Below, piece by piece: positions 5,962 to 44,386 of a DNA stretch of 64,000 nt. The stretch covers positions 372,001-436,000 of the IMG/VR virus record IMGVR_UViG_3300017917_001342, one strand, 5' to 3'. The notes under the pieces are model-generated. The model was given only the letters and a program-made list of their open reading frames with translations. It was not told the origin of the DNA and ran no database searches. The first letter of the stretch is position 1. Every line of letters starts with the position of its first letter. Made by a program: the position numbers and the translations under genes.

Positions 5962-6680
5962 AATTTACCAAATGCATATAAACGTTCTAAGCAAAAGTAA
6001 CAGACACCGCAATGTGTCGGTGTGTCGGTATACATTTGCATATGATTTTCGCAAGACCAAGTAATGGGATAAAGGTCCTCAAGTAAGTTGTAATAGTTGT
6101 ACAGTTTAAAAACTGTTCGTTTATCAGAACGTGCAAAAGGCATGTAATAGGTTACATTGCCTAATTTTCCCACAGTTGAATACAACGGATAAGTTCTATT
6201 AACATCTCTTTCTGACAGCCATTTTTTGCATTCAACTTTATCATATTTGAAGTTGTCAGATTCAACCATTGCTTGAAGTTCATCTATCGGACAATTAATT
6301 GACAACCCGGTATAATTAGAATCAATTGAATGATTTTCTATAACCTCATGTTCCAAGTTATCTTGACCTATTGTGTATTCTTGTGAATTTGATTCAACTG
6401 AATTGTCGATGCGATGATTTAAATTACACGATTCGTAATGTTTAGCCGGATATTTTCCAGTTAATTTTCCAACTAACTCAATAACACCTTTGGCTTTGTT
6501 TACAGAATGTGGTCGTAATGCAGTATTCAATGTATAAGGGTATATGTTAACATCTGTGTAGTCTTTAAAAAAATTGCACAATGCATAATAAATGATACTG
6601 CTGTCTGGTCCCCCAGATAATCTTACTGCGATGTTTTTATCCAAAGGATCTACAGATATAACGTCGTCAATCATCGTCAT
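5958..6680 (-). CDS. QueC-like PP-loop ATPase
   Basis: LSGGPDS and TWSCE...HCGVCYFCLER. Confidence 0.75.
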   Translation of the reverse strand: MTMIDDVISVDPLDKNIAVRLSGGPDSSIIYYALCNFFKDYTDVNIYPYTLNTALRPHSVNKAKGVIELVGKLTGKYPAKHYESCNLNHRIDNSVESNSQEYTIGQDNLEHEVIENHSIDSNYTGLSINCPIDELQAMVESDNFKYDKVECKKWLSERDVNRTYPLYSTVGKLGNVTYYMPFARSDKRTVFKLYNYYNLLEDLYPITWSCENHMQMYTDTPTHCGVCYFCLERLYAFGKL

Positions 6681-8160
6681 TCTTTACACCTAATACGTTA
6701 TCATACCTGCGTAATTCTTTATCTATTATCCAACCAGAATAATCTGTGTTATTAAGTTTCATAATGAATTCGTTTATTTCTTTAAATCGTCTTGCTCTGA
6801 CTTGTAGAGTATTACCTTTATAATCCCAGTCAAAAATGTCAGTATATGAAGTAAGTTCATCTTTAACCAATTCCCAAATAGGATGATCTTCTGACAACAT
6901 CAACGTATTACCGAAACTCAAATACAATAATTTATTGCCCCATTCGTTGGTGTTATGAGCATATCCAGTATCATACAAGTGCTGTATGGTGTTTAATGTA
7001 TGTTGATGGTCTTCTTCAGTTTCAGTTGGATAACCTACTATCATCAACAGTGTGTGTTGTATTTTGTATTTTTGTAACATTTCAAAACACCACCACATGT
7101 CTTCATCAGTGAATTTTTTACCCATGTGATAACGAACATGTTGACTAAATGATTCTATACCTATATCTAATTCAACACACCCGCTGTCTACCATTAATTG
7201 ATAATCAGCTTCCGGTGACTGTGCTTTTGATCTAACTATCCATTGACTAGACCATTTAAAATCCGGATCTGTTTTTCTATATTCTTTTAATTCGTGCAGT
7301 AATTCTCTAAATGCTTTCATACTGCCGTTGATTAAACTGTCTGTAAATTTAAAGAAGTGTCTATTATACTTTTTACGTATTGCTATAATTTCTTCTGCTA
7401 TATGCTTGCCAGATCTAAATCTATACTCTGGCCATATTTGATAAACATTGCAGAATGTGCAGCGTTTTACACAACCACGACTACCAGTGATATACACAGG
7501 TCGATCATAGTCCATAATATGGTATTCATCCCAATTGATATCATCGTAATTTGGTATTTTAACAGAATTTAAATCCAATACTTGAACAGGTGTAAGAGTA
7601 TCAATACCTTTGTATGTAGTATTACCCTTTAGCAATTCAATAATTGCCTGTTCACCGTCACCACAGATATAATGGTCCATAAGACCAATTTCTTTAAACT
7701 TTTGAATGCCCCATTCTATTTGTGCACCGCCCCACACAATTTTAGTGTGCGGCAAATATTGTCTAATCAGCTGACTAAGTTTTACTGCAACTGATTGGCT
7801 GTATATTGATAGAATACTCAATCCTATCCATTTTGGATTCTTACGTTTAAAGAACCCTATCCATTCTAGAAAAACAGATTCGTTTTCTTTGTAAAATTCT
7901 TGAAATTCTCTGTTTAGTTCGAGAGAATCATTTTCTATTTCGTTGTGATGAGTTCTAAACAATGCATCATTATTGAAAAAATAATGTTCGTGTTTATTGA
8001 TCTTTTTTAGTGCATTAAAAAGCTTTATATTTAAATCTACAACCTCACATGTAAAACCTTCATCCATTAAATGAGATTTTAACAATGCAGGCCCAACAGT
8101 CGGTGCATCTGGATTTATTTTAGGTATTATACAGATAATAATATCTAGTTGATTATCCAT
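6667..8160 (-). CDS. Cobalamin-binding (class B-like) radical SAM protein
   Basis: N-terminal B12-binding-like domain (IGLS..., IVWGGA, ICGDGE), followed by SRGCVKRCTFC, FTDSLIN, GIESFS, MIVGYPTET. Confidence 0.85.
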   Translation of the reverse strand: MDNQLDIIICIIPKINPDAPTVGPALLKSHLMDEGFTCEVVDLNIKLFNALKKINKHEHYFFNNDALFRTHHNEIENDSLELNREFQEFYKENESVFLEWIGFFKRKNPKWIGLSILSIYSQSVAVKLSQLIRQYLPHTKIVWGGAQIEWGIQKFKEIGLMDHYICGDGEQAIIELLKGNTTYKGIDTLTPVQVLDLNSVKIPNYDDINWDEYHIMDYDRPVYITGSRGCVKRCTFCNVYQIWPEYRFRSGKHIAEEIIAIRKKYNRHFFKFTDSLINGSMKAFRELLHELKEYRKTDPDFKWSSQWIVRSKAQSPEADYQLMVDSGCVELDIGIESFSQHVRYHMGKKFTDEDMWWCFEMLQKYKIQHTLLMIVGYPTETEEDHQHTLNTIQHLYDTGYAHNTNEWGNKLLYLSFGNTLMLSEDHPIWELVKDELTSYTDIFDWDYKGNTLQVRARRFKEINEFIMKLNNTDYSGWIIDKELRRYDNVLGVKNDDD

Positions 8161-42444: not shown

Positions 42445-43299
42445 ATGTCAGCTAATCCACTTCAACGGTATTTTCGCAGACCTGCATTATGGGTAAAATT
42501 ACCAACACTAGGCAAATGGTACCAAAACAATGAAGTGCGTTACAATGAAAATTTCGAAGTACAGGTCTATGGCATAACTGCAATAGACGAAATCTTAATC
42601 AATACACCCGACGCACTGTTTAATGGGCATGCATTAGAAAGCGTTATTAGAAGTTGTATACCAGAAGTATATGACATTAAGAGTCTATTACAGCCAGACT
42701 TAGAAGCACTGTTTTTAGGAATCAAATCTGCATCAAGTAACGGAAAATATGAAATCACTAGGACTTGCAAAAAATGTACACATGAAAATACATTTGATTT
42801 AAATTGCAATCATCTTTTAGATAGCATGAGATATCTAGAAGATTCAGATGCTGTAGTCAATGTAGGTAATGATATTAAGGTGCATGTAAAACCTTACGAT
42901 TTCGACATGCGCAGTTTATTCATTAAACGACAACTAGAAGAAAGAAAAACTCTTTCATTAATAGAAAATGACACAGAGATAGACGATAATTTATTGAAAG
43001 CTAGCAAATATGCAAAAAGCTTAGAAGAAATGACTAAATTGACATTTAGGTTGATGTCCGAGTCTATTGTTGCAGTAGAAATTCTAGGCAGAGATGCACA
43101 ATACGTCACTGACAAAGACCATATATCAGAATGGATGTTAAATGTTAATAAGCAAACTGCTAGTTCAATCATAGAGGCAGTTAATGCATTGAACGCATTA
43201 GGTCCCCAAAGGTCCACTACTGCTGTGTGTCAAAATTGCAGTCACACCTGGGAAGAAAGCCTTAATTTTGATCCAACTGTTTTTTTTACGCAACGATAA
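42445..43299 (+). CDS. gp26: Baseplate hub assembly / tail chaperone protein (T4 gp26-like)
   Basis: NPLQRYFRRP...KLPT.G.WY, DLEALF..IKSAS.G, CxxC pairs, ends FDPTVFF. Confidence 0.7.
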   Translation: MSANPLQRYFRRPALWVKLPTLGKWYQNNEVRYNENFEVQVYGITAIDEILINTPDALFNGHALESVIRSCIPEVYDIKSLLQPDLEALFLGIKSASSNGKYEITRTCKKCTHENTFDLNCNHLLDSMRYLEDSDAVVNVGNDIKVHVKPYDFDMRSLFIKRQLEERKTLSLIENDTEIDDNLLKASKYAKSLEEMTKLTFRLMSESIVAVEILGRDAQYVTDKDHISEWMLNVNKQTASSIIEAVNALNALGPQRSTTAVCQNCSHTWEESLNFDPTVFFTQR

Positions 43300-43517
43300 C
43301 AGACTCTGATGTAGAAAAAATAGATAACATGTTAAGACTGTTATCTAGCAATAGAGATGTTATCGAAAATGACATTAACACATTGGTTTATTACATGAAT
43401 GGCGGATTGGATTATAATGATGCCTGGTTACTGACATCTGATCAACGCAAGAACATGTATAATGTCATTCAGAAACACTTCAATGCGATTAATCCTAAAA
43501 ACAAGTCTATGTTATAA
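43287..43517 (+). CDS. -1 frame extension of the gp26-like gene (contains track ORF 43329..43517)
   Basis: Open from the T-run at 43281-43287 through to ATG 43329. No SD before that ATG. YYMNGGLDYNDAWLLT motif. Confidence 0.6.
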   Translation, partial: YATITDSDVEKIDNMLRLLSSNRDVIENDINTLVYYMNGGLDYNDAWLLTSDQRKNMYNVIQKHFNAINPKNKSML

Positions 43518-43529
43518 TTCTATGTTTTG

Positions 43530-43575
43530 TGATGAGCTAAAGCTCATCAGTTATTTGATCTAAAGATCAAATAAC
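43530..43575. repeat. Two abutting perfect palindromes with identical CT-AA-AG centres
   Basis: TGATGAGCT-AA-AGCTCATCA (43530-43549) and GTTATTTGATCT-AA-AGATCAAATAAC (43550-43575). Confidence 0.9.
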
Positions 43576-43612
43576 ATTTTTAATAATTAAAAACTATCAA
43601 TTTATTAAGTAT

Positions 43613-43970
43613 TTCTGGTCGAGTTTGGGATCATATCACTCCCTTACCCAGGGAGTAATAAGATTGTCTTTCTGGTTCGAATGACGACCTGCCCTTTCAT
43701 CCTTGTTCTGCGTGAACAGCTGGCGGAGTACCTAATTCCAGCTTACAGATGTGATCCTCTGAGGAGTCTATACCTCAATACTCGGTTATGGGAGTTTACC
43801 CAAGCTACAGTAAGGTCAAACGGCCAGACCATTACTGCACTACAGAAAGCCAGTCAGACGGCTACTGTAGTCCTTTTTCTGATTTACTTGGCCAGGGCTT
43901 TGCAGTAGAATCCCTGTCAGTGAGTGTGATAACCTTGCCGTTATCCTTTCACTGGATGGAAAACACCATC
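43613..43970 (-). ncRNA. Putative large structured non-coding RNA (family unassigned)
   Basis: At least 9 consecutive stem-loops in a visibly GC-richer intergenic stretch. Several plus-strand A.C mismatches read as G.U on the minus strand. Confidence 0.55.
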
Positions 43971-44038
43971 ATTATGAAGCCAATATACGCGAAAGTTTTA
44001 GTTAATGGGAAATAAAGCAGTGAATACTAAGTGAGATA

Positions 44039-44386
44039 TTAAATTGAGCCTAGTGTTTTTTGAATCTCTTGATCTATAACTTCTGAGAGTTTTGTGCGTT
44101 CTAAAGTAATCATTGCTATGCCTACAACTGACCACAACGCTTGACGTTGTTCGTCAGTTAATTTCTTATACTTATTATCGAGTATCTTATGAAATTCTTC
44201 TTTCATATTATAGCATGGCCCAGCTATAGTACCGTAGTTTACCATTACTGGTTTGCGTTGCCATGGACTTTTTTTAGCTGCTGGTGCTGCTGCGGGTTTA
44301 GCATCAGCGGGGAACCAGTGTTTATCAGCTGATTCAGTAACTGCGTCTTTAGTTGCCTTTGTAGTCTTTTTAATTGCCATTCTCAT
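44039..44386 (-). CDS. Hypothetical protein
   Basis: K/A-rich N-terminus. Last gene of the recombination operon. Start may be ATG 44380. Confidence 0.5.
   Translation of the reverse strand: MRMAIKKTTKATKDAVTESADKHWFPADAKPAAAPAAKKSPWQRKPVMVNYGTIAGPCYNMKEEFHKILDNKYKKLTDEQRQALWSVVGIAMITLERTKLSEVIDQEIQKTLGSI

What the first reader, a model, noticed from the sequence alone, without database searches (positions are those of the whole stretch)
43530..43612. Twin abutting CTAAAG-centred palindromes followed by an AT-rich tract
Seen: 9-bp and 12-bp perfect arms with different sequences but the same CT-AA-AG core, directly adjacent, then about 37 nt of almost pure A/T. Same core with different arms implies selection for hairpin or cruciform shape. 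Inference: replication origin (cruciform plus unwinding element), packaging/nicking site, or 3' end element of the neighbouring RNA. The resolvase and gp46/47 operon points toward it.
Basis: partly seen in the sequence, partly recalled or inferred. Interest (0 to 1): 0.6.

Follow-up and report, generated by a model that had tools for sequence, protein, structure and literature searches.

The report
Conserved twin-hairpin transcript-end module
Two back-to-back hairpins with a T-rich tail sit where a giant phage's baseplate operon meets an oppositely oriented, undescribed 380-nt structured RNA; they look like a conserved double terminator and RNA end-cap, not a replication origin.

Summary
Hp1 (43530-43549) and hp2 (43550-43575) abut with no gap, and a 37-nt tract of 34 A/T follows. 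This is the only abutting pair of perfect hairpins with stems of 8 bp or more in the 518-kb genome, and the element is single-copy.

It is conserved. An oriented twin hairpin lies at the same syntenic site in dozens of uncultured T4-like jumbo phages. It follows the last + strand gene after the baseplate-hub gene and precedes a roughly 350-530 nt ORF-free gap. Stems covary, and a T-rich tail follows hp2 on the + strand only.

The gap (43609-43988) encodes a strongly covarying structured RNA on the - strand. In two relatives, part of the syntenic RNA is Rfam's Polynucleobacter-1 motif.

Best reading, inferred rather than shown:
- Hp2 plus its U-tract is the intrinsic terminator of the hub/62-aa operon, a "V-shaped" tandem type.
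- The same pair caps the 3' side of the - strand RNA. The - strand fold is the more stable one in 40 of 40 instances.

Nothing supports an origin or packaging site. The shared CTAAAG core is not conserved even in close relatives. No transcript-end data exist.

The parts
42445..43299 (+). Baseplate hub gene (284 aa), the syntenic anchor
   Evidence: PF12322 at E 2.7e-13; phrog_150 baseplate hub; 609 homologues
43329..43517 (+). 62-aa ORF, last + strand gene before the hairpins; its stop codon lies 12 nt before hp1
   Evidence: ORF list. Homologous 58-75 aa ORFs with a W[YF]M.GG motif follow the hub gene in relatives. No Pfam or PHROG family.
43530..43549 (.). Hp1: TGATGAGC-TAAA-GCTCATCA
   Evidence: The stem is invariant in close relatives. 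The exact 20-mer occurs in 15 other viral contigs at the syntenic site. The stem covaries in distant relatives.
43550..43575 (.). Hp2: GTTATTTGATC-TAAA-GATCAAATAAC
   Evidence: Four compensatory pairs (18 cells) in close relatives; 0 of 500 shuffles reach the covariation score.
43576..43584 (+). T-rich tail (ATTTTTAAT) directly after hp2: the U-tract of a + strand intrinsic terminator
   Evidence: The terminator scan lists both hairpins on + only. In relatives, 5.9 T in the 10 nt after hp2 against a background of 3.2, in a search without any tail criterion.
43576..43608 (.). A/T-rich spacer, including the A/T-only palindrome at 43577-43593; not conserved in sequence or length
43609..43988 (-). 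About 380-nt conserved structured RNA candidate; the hairpins lie beyond its 3' side
   Evidence: 87 pairs, 99.8% of cells paired, 18 compensatory pairs, and one-sided changes that all keep pairing through G-U. The full - strand transcript folds with z = -5.8 and the hairpins stay separate 3' modules. No Rfam family matches.
44039..44386 (-). 115-aa ORF, last gene of the - strand operon (gp55-like sigma, gp47, gp46, PDDEXK nuclease, this ORF) that runs toward the RNA

Best explanation
The two palindromes are one conserved, oriented twin-hairpin module. It marks the boundary between two convergent transcription units of a 518-kb T4-like phage.

On the + strand, RNA polymerase leaving the baseplate-hub/62-aa operon transcribes hp1, which starts 12 nt after the stop codon. 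It then transcribes hp2, which is followed at once by AUUUUU. Hp2 plus this U-tract acts as a Rho-independent terminator. Hp1 makes it a tandem ('V-shaped') terminator.

On the - strand, the same two hairpins lie about 35 nt beyond a roughly 380-nt structured RNA (43988 to 43609). They probably define or protect that RNA's 3' end as a barrier to 3' exonucleases.

The A/T tract is the U-tract plus an unconserved spacer, not an unwinding element.

Shown: the structure, its conservation, its orientation, the T-tail, the strand of the neighbouring RNA, and the strand asymmetry of stability. Inferred: termination itself and the end-cap role.
For: (1) Position. The site is a convergent junction. The 62-aa ORF ends at 43517, and the next ORF is on the - strand and ends at 44039. 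In 43 of 50 related loci a + strand ORF lies to the left of hp1. In many it ends 0-20 nt before hp1, and where the distance is larger the 70-aa cut-off skipped the small ORF. The next ORF to the right is on the - strand in 34 of 41 loci; the median gap over all 41 is 411 nt.

(2) Terminator signature on + only. Both hairpins are listed as terminator-like on +, none on - at this site. A structure-only search of 80 related loci gave 51 hits on the hub strand and 1 on the other. Without any tail or closing-pair criterion it gave 47 against 20, with 20 in shuffles over both strands. T content after hp2 was 5.9 of 10 against a background of 3.2, and A is not enriched before hp1.

(3) Real structure. 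Hp2 has 4 compensatory pairs among close relatives. Both stems covary across 40 distinct distant instances.

(4) Link to the - strand RNA. The gap RNA is on the - strand. In L037 and L059 the syntenic RNA carries Rfam RF01718 on that strand, at 110 and 95 bits. The - strand fold of the twin hairpin is more stable than the + strand fold in 40 of 40 instances, by 2.7 kcal/mol on average (Wilcoxon 3.5e-8). In most distant relatives the - strand loops read GNA or GNNA. By my reading of the sequences, hp2's internal loop reads as tandem GA/AG on that strand.

(5) Where a - strand gene has been inserted to the left, the hairpins stay next to the RNA. This holds for all 15 loci that share the exact hp1 20-mer.

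(6) Singularity. The genome's other long hairpins are mostly single, G+C-rich stems flanked by A and T runs. This is the only twin.

(7) Weak support. Two runs labelled RNA-Seq hold five read-sized contigs, all inside 43559-44096 and none in the flanking genes. One of them spans hp2, the spacer and the RNA.
Against: No transcript ends have been measured. The 'RNA' runs are flagged by the tool as probably DNA, and contigs show neither ends nor strand.

Hp2 is A/T-rich, with 3 G-C pairs in 11, which is weak for a canonical terminator.

In the window itself the strand asymmetry is negligible (-22.2 against -22.5 kcal/mol). The window's loops are TAAA/TTTA rather than GNA, and its hp2 has no GA internal loop. 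The - strand argument therefore rests on relatives.

There is no U-tract after hp1 on the - strand, so that RNA cannot end there by canonical intrinsic termination.

Three features are more specific than a plain terminator or end-cap needs:
- The hp1 stem is invariant in close relatives.
- The identical 20-mer occurs in three separate hub-tree clades.
- The UC/UC (GA/AG) internal loop is conserved.

The host and its polymerase are unknown.
Confidence: 0.6

Rival explanations
1. Plain + strand tandem terminator only. The - strand features (GNA loops, GA/AG loop, higher stability) are by-products of strand composition, and the neighbouring RNA ends elsewhere.
For: A T-tail is found only on +. 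The hairpins start 0-20 nt after a + strand stop codon in many relatives. The window's own copy shows no strand asymmetry.
Against: 40 of 40 instances are more stable on the - strand. Loops begin with G and end with A on the - strand almost without exception, and the conserved 2x2 loop weakens the + strand hairpin. The hairpins stay beside the RNA when a - strand gene is inserted to the left.
Confidence: 0.2
2. A functional 3' domain of the - strand RNA. A phage or host protein would recognise it, for example through the tandem G-A motif in hp2 or the conserved hp1 stem. It could also be a processing site. It would be more than a passive end-cap.
For: The GA/AG internal loop with a covarying 2-bp inner helix is conserved in most distant relatives. 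The hp1 stem is invariant in close relatives. The identical 20-mer occurs in three hub-tree clades. The two hairpins always abut with zero spacing.
Against: The window's hp2 lacks the internal loop altogether. Hp1 stems differ between phages with nearly identical hub proteins, L033, L036 and L041. The spacer to the RNA body is unconserved. No binding partner is identified.
Confidence: 0.13
3. DNA-level element. The palindromes would extrude as a cruciform, or fold as single-stranded hairpins, next to an easily melted A/T tract. They would serve as a replication origin or priming site, or as a break site processed by the neighbouring PDDEXK resolvase and gp46/gp47 to start recombination-dependent replication.
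For: The element is adjacent to the resolvase-like PDDEXK gene and the gp46/gp47 operon in the window and in relatives. On the - strand, relatives' loops are C-GNA-G and C-GNNA-G. These are the loop types of very stable DNA mini-hairpins found at phage G4 and ssiA priming sites and in N4 promoters (PMC13037366). As DNA both strands fold with z about -7. The whole-genome cumulative GC-skew minimum lies within 10 kb of the site.
Against: The skew minimum is a flat plateau from 380 to 500 kb, and at 1-kb scale there is no V at the site. There are no iterons or repeat arrays. The A/T tract is variable, and its conserved property is T-richness on one strand, as for a U-tract. Arms of 8-11 bp are short for extrusion (general knowledge). 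Most relatives' hp2 carries mismatches. The window's loops are not GNA. The - strand operon simply ends here, as at any convergent junction.
Confidence: 0.05
4. Packaging (pac) or nicking site.
For: None beyond being a unique palindromic site.
Against: It lies 103 kb from the record ends. The 89-bp end overlap looks like closure of a circular assembly, which would suit headful packaging (my reading). The stem sequences turn over quickly between near-identical phages.
Confidence: 0.01

Closest known systems
V-shaped (abutting tandem) intrinsic terminators, as classed in WebGeSTer DB (PMC3013805)
   Same: Two hairpins, the second starting immediately after the first, downstream of a stop codon, with a U-rich trail after the second.
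   Different: Here the pair is conserved as a unit across a large phage clade. In most relatives it has a fixed asymmetry: a short hp1 closed by C-G, and hp2 with a UC/UC internal loop. It is more stable on the antisense strand. It always adjoins a large structured RNA gene.
Bidirectional or X-shaped terminators at convergent junctions (PMC3013805; the genome's own A-run/GC-stem/T-run hairpins)
   Same: It sits between convergent units and folds on both strands.
   Different: There is no U-tract on the - strand. It has two A/T-rich stems instead of one G+C-rich stem flanked by A and T runs.
3'-terminal stabiliser hairpins that block 3' exonucleases, such as REP-type stabilisers and terminator hairpins of stable RNAs (general knowledge, not tested here)
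   Same: Very stable hairpins beyond the 3' side of a stable-looking RNA; in relatives the loops are of the most stable classes on that RNA's strand.
   Different: The role is not shown here. The hairpins are separated from the RNA body by an unconserved A/U-rich linker of about 35 nt.
DNA mini-hairpins GCGNAGC/GCGNNAGC at single-strand priming sites and N4 promoters (PMC13037366)
   Same: Relatives' - strand loops are C-GNA-G or C-GNNA-G.
   Different: The window's loops are TAAA/TTTA. Nothing shows single-stranded DNA or priming here.
Polynucleobacter-1 RNA motif, Rfam RF01718 (Weinberg 2010, PMC2864571). This concerns the neighbouring RNA, not the hairpins.
   Same: In L037 and L059 the - strand RNA at the syntenic site begins with a full-length RF01718 match.
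   Different: The window's RNA does not match RF01718 even at E 10. A sequence profile of it finds only its own clade.

Membership tests
Rho-independent (intrinsic) terminator | Stable RNA hairpin | tested here: met
   Hp1 and hp2 form in the minimum-free-energy and centroid folds on the + strand. Hp2 is supported by covariation.
Rho-independent (intrinsic) terminator | U-rich tract directly 3' of the hairpin | tested here: met
   ATTTTTAAT follows hp2. Relatives have 5.9 T in 10 against a background of 3.2, without selecting for it.
Rho-independent (intrinsic) terminator | G+C-rich stem | tested here: inconclusive
   Hp1 has 4 G-C pairs in 8 and hp2 has 3 in 11. That is weaker than the genome's typical terminator-like hairpins.
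Rho-independent (intrinsic) terminator | Lies just downstream of the last gene of a transcription unit | tested here: met
   It starts 12 nt after the stop of the 62-aa ORF. In 43 of 50 related loci the ORF to the left is on the + strand, in many ending 0-20 nt before hp1.
Rho-independent (intrinsic) terminator | Transcripts actually end there | not testable with these tools
   Only Logan contigs were available, and they show neither ends nor strand.
V-shaped tandem terminator (WebGeSTer) | [quoted passage not shown] | tested here: met
   43549/43550 with no gap. Abutment was required in the search of relatives and is visible in the close relatives.
Bidirectional (X-shaped) terminator | Terminator signature, hairpin plus U-tract, on both strands | tested here: not met
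   The - strand after hp1 reads CAAAACAUAG. A is not enriched before hp1 in relatives. The scan lists no - strand site here.
Phage replication origin | Strand-composition switch at the site | tested here: not met
   The cumulative GC skew is a flat plateau from 380 to 500 kb, with no V at the site at 1-kb scale.
Phage replication origin | Iterons or repeated binding sites, with a conserved unwinding element | tested here: not met
   Only short two-copy repeats at chance level. The A/T tract varies in sequence and length among close relatives.
Phage replication origin | Replication initiates there | not testable with these tools
   This needs mapping of replication intermediates or a plasmid assay in infected cells.
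pac/cos packaging site | Coincides with genome termini or read-start pile-ups | tested here: not met
   The site is at genome position 415,530 of 518,643. The ends overlap by 89 bp. No begin or end pile-ups were reported, but only contigs were laid.
DNA mini-hairpin (GCGNAGC) priming or promoter element | C-GNA-G or C-GNNA-G loop on the functional strand | tested here: not met
   The window's loops are C-TAAA-G on + and C-TTTA-G on -. The feature is met on the - strand in most distant relatives.
Rfam RF01718 Polynucleobacter-1 (neighbouring RNA) | Covariance-model match at or above the gathering score | tested here: not met
   No match in the window at gathering score or at E up to 10. Relatives L037 and L059 match at 110 and 95 bits.

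The most novel reading that the evidence does not exclude
The twin palindrome would act as DNA. Its - strand hairpins (GNA mini-hairpin loops and tandem G-A in relatives), flanked by an easily melted A/T tract, would extrude or fold on single-stranded DNA. The adjacent PDDEXK resolvase and gp46/gp47 nuclease would process them. The result would be a programmed break or priming site that starts recombination-dependent replication in this clade of giant phages.
Probability: 0.04. Interest if true: 0.85.

Novelty: new variant of a known kind. Interest (0 to 1): 0.4.

Why it matters
If the model holds, a large clade of freshwater giant T4-like phages keeps a dedicated two-hairpin boundary. That boundary would stop the structural operon from reading antisense into a large structured RNA gene, and it would cap that RNA's 3' end.

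The module gives an easy sequence landmark for a family of phage non-coding RNAs of unknown function at a fixed locus. There are at least three unalignable types. One of them contains the orphan Polynucleobacter-1 motif, which in 2010 had not been seen in any sequenced purified phage.

The hairpins themselves are probably ordinary in mechanism. Their value is as a pointer to the RNA, and as a natural example of a terminator shaped by selection on both strands.

Tried and rejected
- Rfam over the whole window at gathering score, and over 43300-44300 at E up to 10, gave nothing credible. ARAGORN found no tRNA or tmRNA.
- Megablast of the region against GenBank phages found no match. The search for related loci with the single hub protein found no relative. 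An alignment query was needed.
- A loose twin-hairpin scan of the genome (stems of 5-6 bp or more) was too permissive to be useful. It was replaced by strict counts and a strand-controlled search.
- First impression that the gap RNA is on the + strand, from 5 sequences with invariant G-U pairs: overturned. Shared-helix wobble counts, the 14-sequence - strand alignment and the strand of the RF01718 matches all point to the - strand.
- A + strand promoter for the RNA in the A/T tract: dropped once the strand was settled.
- Hammerhead reading of UGAUGAG in hp1: rejected by eye, because no GAAA follows stem II.
- A long-range helix bracketing the RNA (I15): its position and strength are inconsistent among relatives, so it is inconclusive.
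- Cultured relatives PA5oct and Atu_ph07: no clear twin motif by my criteria, although PA5oct has a long stretch carrying only tiny annotated ORFs beyond the gene after its hub gene.
- Literature searches for a described jumbo-phage RNA or twin terminator of this kind found nothing specific.
- No alternative genetic code was used.

Full report
**What the window is.** The window is positions 372,001-436,000 of a 518,643-bp IMG/VR virus record. An 89-bp end overlap looks like closure of a circular assembly (my reading). It is a T4-like giant phage. Its portal protein is 50-52% identical to those of Pseudomonas phage PA5oct, Agrobacterium phage Atu_ph07 and Sinorhizobium phage Phosso. The DNA recurs in pond and freshwater metagenomes.

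Gene layout around the finding:
- On the + strand: a baseplate-hub gene (42445-43299, PF12322), then a 62-aa ORF (43329-43517).
- On the - strand, running toward the site: a gp55-like late sigma factor, gp47 (SbcD-like), gp46 (Rad50-like), a PDDEXK resolvase-like nuclease, and a 115-aa ORF ending at 44039.

The finding therefore lies at a convergent junction, with about 520 nt free of any credible ORF.

**The observation.** It is correct as described.
- Hp1 is TGATGAGC-TAAA-GCTCATCA (43530-43549).
- Hp2 is GTTATTTGATC-TAAA-GATCAAATAAC (43550-43575).
- They abut with no gap. The next 37 nt are 34 A/T and hold a third, A/T-only palindrome (43577-43593).
- The folds are far better than shuffles, as RNA and as DNA.
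- The genome is rich in long perfect hairpins: 59 with stems of 10 bp or more, against about 1-8 in Markov shuffles. Most of the others are single G+C-rich stems flanked by A and T runs.
- This is the only abutting pair with stems of 8 bp or more, and the 46-nt element is single-copy.
- CTAAAG is not enriched as a word and occurs as a hairpin loop only here.

**Conservation.** The exact hp1 20-mer occurs in 15 other viral contigs. Each time a second hairpin with a different, self-complementary stem follows directly. All 15 share the synteny: hub gene, small ORF, hairpins, an ORF-free gap, then resolvase and gp46 on the other strand.

I then searched 80 loci fetched with a hub-protein alignment, using structure-only criteria.
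- Criteria: perfect hp1 closed by C-G, abutting hp2, T-rich tail.
- Result: 51 hits on the hub strand and 1 on the other.
- Dropping the tail and closing-pair criteria gave 47 against 20 distinct hits. Shuffles gave 20 over both strands.
- The tail was still T-rich, 5.9 of 10 against a background of 3.2.

Sixteen distinct close relatives were recovered through a conserved stretch of the gap. They keep hp1's stem (TGATGAGC/GCTCATCA) and hp2's base (GTTA...TAAC). Hp2's interior takes four compensating versions. Both loops vary freely. The shared CTAAAG core is therefore not what is conserved; the twin-hairpin shape is.

In more distant relatives:
- Hp1 reads AGAnnnnC-(TAC/TTC/TGC/TAAC/TTGC/TAAA)-GnnnnTCT.
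- Hp2 has a covarying outer stem, a UC/UC internal loop, a covarying 2-bp inner helix and a small loop.

The window's hp2 is a derived, fully paired version.

**The neighbour.** The gap is more conserved than the flanking proteins. It folds into a structure with abundant covariation.

With 14 sequences read on the - strand:
- 87 pairs, with 99.8% of cells paired.
- 18 pairs carry compensatory changes, across 74 cells.
- Every one-sided change keeps pairing through G-U.
- No shuffle or slid control comes near.

Read on the + strand, the same helices show C-A breaks. A second RNA type in relatives gives 20 G-U pairs on the - strand against 4 on the + strand in shared helices.

In L037 and L059 the syntenic RNA starts with full-length matches to Rfam RF01718, the Polynucleobacter-1 RNA, on the - strand. 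That motif has no known function. Its discoverers noted they had not seen it in any sequenced purified phage (PMC2864571 supplement).

The window's RNA (43609-43988, - strand) matches no Rfam family. A sequence profile of it finds only its own clade. The hairpins thus lie about 35 nt beyond the 3' side of a - strand structured RNA. In a fold of the whole 476-nt - strand transcript they remain independent 3' modules (z = -5.8).

**Which strand do the hairpins serve? Apparently both.**

For the + strand:
- In many relatives the module begins 0-20 nt after the stop codon of whatever + strand gene comes last.
- Only the + strand has a U-tract.
- The T-richness is kept while its sequence drifts. 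That is the pattern expected of a terminator tail.

For the - strand:
- The fold is more stable in 40 of 40 instances, by 2.7 kcal/mol on average (Wilcoxon 3.5e-8).
- On that strand most loops read GNA or GNNA. By my reading of the sequences, the internal loop reads as tandem GA/AG.
- When a - strand gene has been inserted to the left, the hairpins stay beside the RNA. This holds for all 15 loci that share the exact hp1 20-mer. The inserted gene then starts 15-46 nt beyond hp1. That also argues against strong - strand termination there.

In the window's own copy the strand asymmetry is negligible.

**Model.** Hp2 plus its U-tract terminates the hub operon. With hp1 it forms the rare 'V-shaped' terminator class of WebGeSTer, 1,615 of 1.2 million predicted terminators. 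The same pair, in the - strand transcript, probably defines or protects the 3' end of the structured RNA. Termination and protection are inferences. The only expression hint is weak. Two runs labelled RNA-Seq, which the tool flags as probably DNA, hold five read-sized contigs. All lie within 43559-44096 and none in the flanking genes. One spans hp2, the spacer and the RNA.

**What does not fit neatly.**
- Hp1's stem is invariant in close relatives.
- The identical 20-mer appears in three separate clades of the hub tree.
- Yet phages with nearly identical hubs (L033, L036, L041) carry different hp1 stems. This suggests fast turnover or exchange of the module.
- The conserved UC/UC (GA/AG) loop hints at recognition by a protein.

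These points keep a 'functional 3' domain' rival alive.

**Origin, cruciform and packaging readings.**
- The cumulative GC-skew minimum lies within 10 kb of the site. But it is a flat plateau from 380 to 500 kb, with no V at the site at 1-kb scale.
- There are no iteron-like repeats.
- The A/T tract is variable.
- The site is far from the record ends.
- The resemblance of relatives' - strand loops to DNA mini-hairpins at priming sites (PMC13037366) is real. It does not apply to the window's loops.

I keep a DNA-level role at about 5%.

**Verdict.** The element is a conserved variant of a known kind, a tandem terminator and RNA end structure. Its main value is as the landmark of an undescribed family of large phage RNAs.

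Noticed in passing
window 43609-43988, - strand: A conserved structured RNA candidate of about 380 nt with no Rfam match. It has 87 pairs, 99.8% of cells paired and 18 compensatory pairs in 14 relatives. It is more conserved than the flanking proteins. This is probably the most interesting thing in the region.
   Followed up: yes
L037:4888-5024 (-) and L059:6043-6178 (-): Full-length matches to Rfam RF01718, the Polynucleobacter-1 RNA, at the syntenic site of T4-like giant-phage contigs (110 and 95 bits). In 2010 the motif's discoverers had not detected it in any sequenced purified phage. At least three unalignable RNA types occupy this locus in the clade.
   Followed up: partly
window 43609-43622 and 43666-43680 (+ strand coordinates): The RNA holds two copies of UCGA(A)CCAGAAA on the - strand (D6). 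The same four relatives (L106, L107, L111, L132) carry G to U in both copies (near columns 318 and 379). That is a coordinated change between identical rather than complementary motifs, and could mean a common partner. The internal copy is antisense to a tRNA T-loop-like GGUUCGAAU.
   Followed up: no
window 43577-43593: A third, A/T-only palindrome, TTTTTAA-TAA-TTAAAAA, starts 1 nt after hp2. Its left arm is the U-tract itself. It is not conserved in relatives.
   Followed up: partly
window 43329-43517 (+) and homologues in L024-L103: A 58-75 aa ORF family with a W[YF]M.GG motif follows the baseplate-hub gene in many relatives across the clade. It has no Pfam or PHROG family.
   Followed up: no
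whole genome G000: 59 perfect hairpins with stems of 10 bp or more, against about 1-8 in shuffles. Most are G+C-rich stems flanked by A and T runs, which look like bidirectional terminators.
   Followed up: partly
window 43559-44096: Two public runs labelled METAGENOMIC RNA-Seq, flagged by the tool as probably DNA, contain five read-sized contigs. All fall inside the ORF-free gap and none in the flanking genes.
   Followed up: partly
L009, L012, L014, L017, L019, L021-L023: In one lineage, a - strand gene weakly resembling a 5'-deoxynucleotidase (PF06941, E 0.0012, below the family cut-off) is inserted between the small ORF and hp1 where that flank was captured. Its start codon lies about 15 nt beyond hp1.
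   Followed up: partly
L135 (PA5oct) 6529-8041: About 1.5 kb beyond the gene that follows the PA5oct hub gene carries only tiny annotated hypothetical ORFs of 38-50 aa. It may hold an equivalent non-coding RNA.
   Followed up: no
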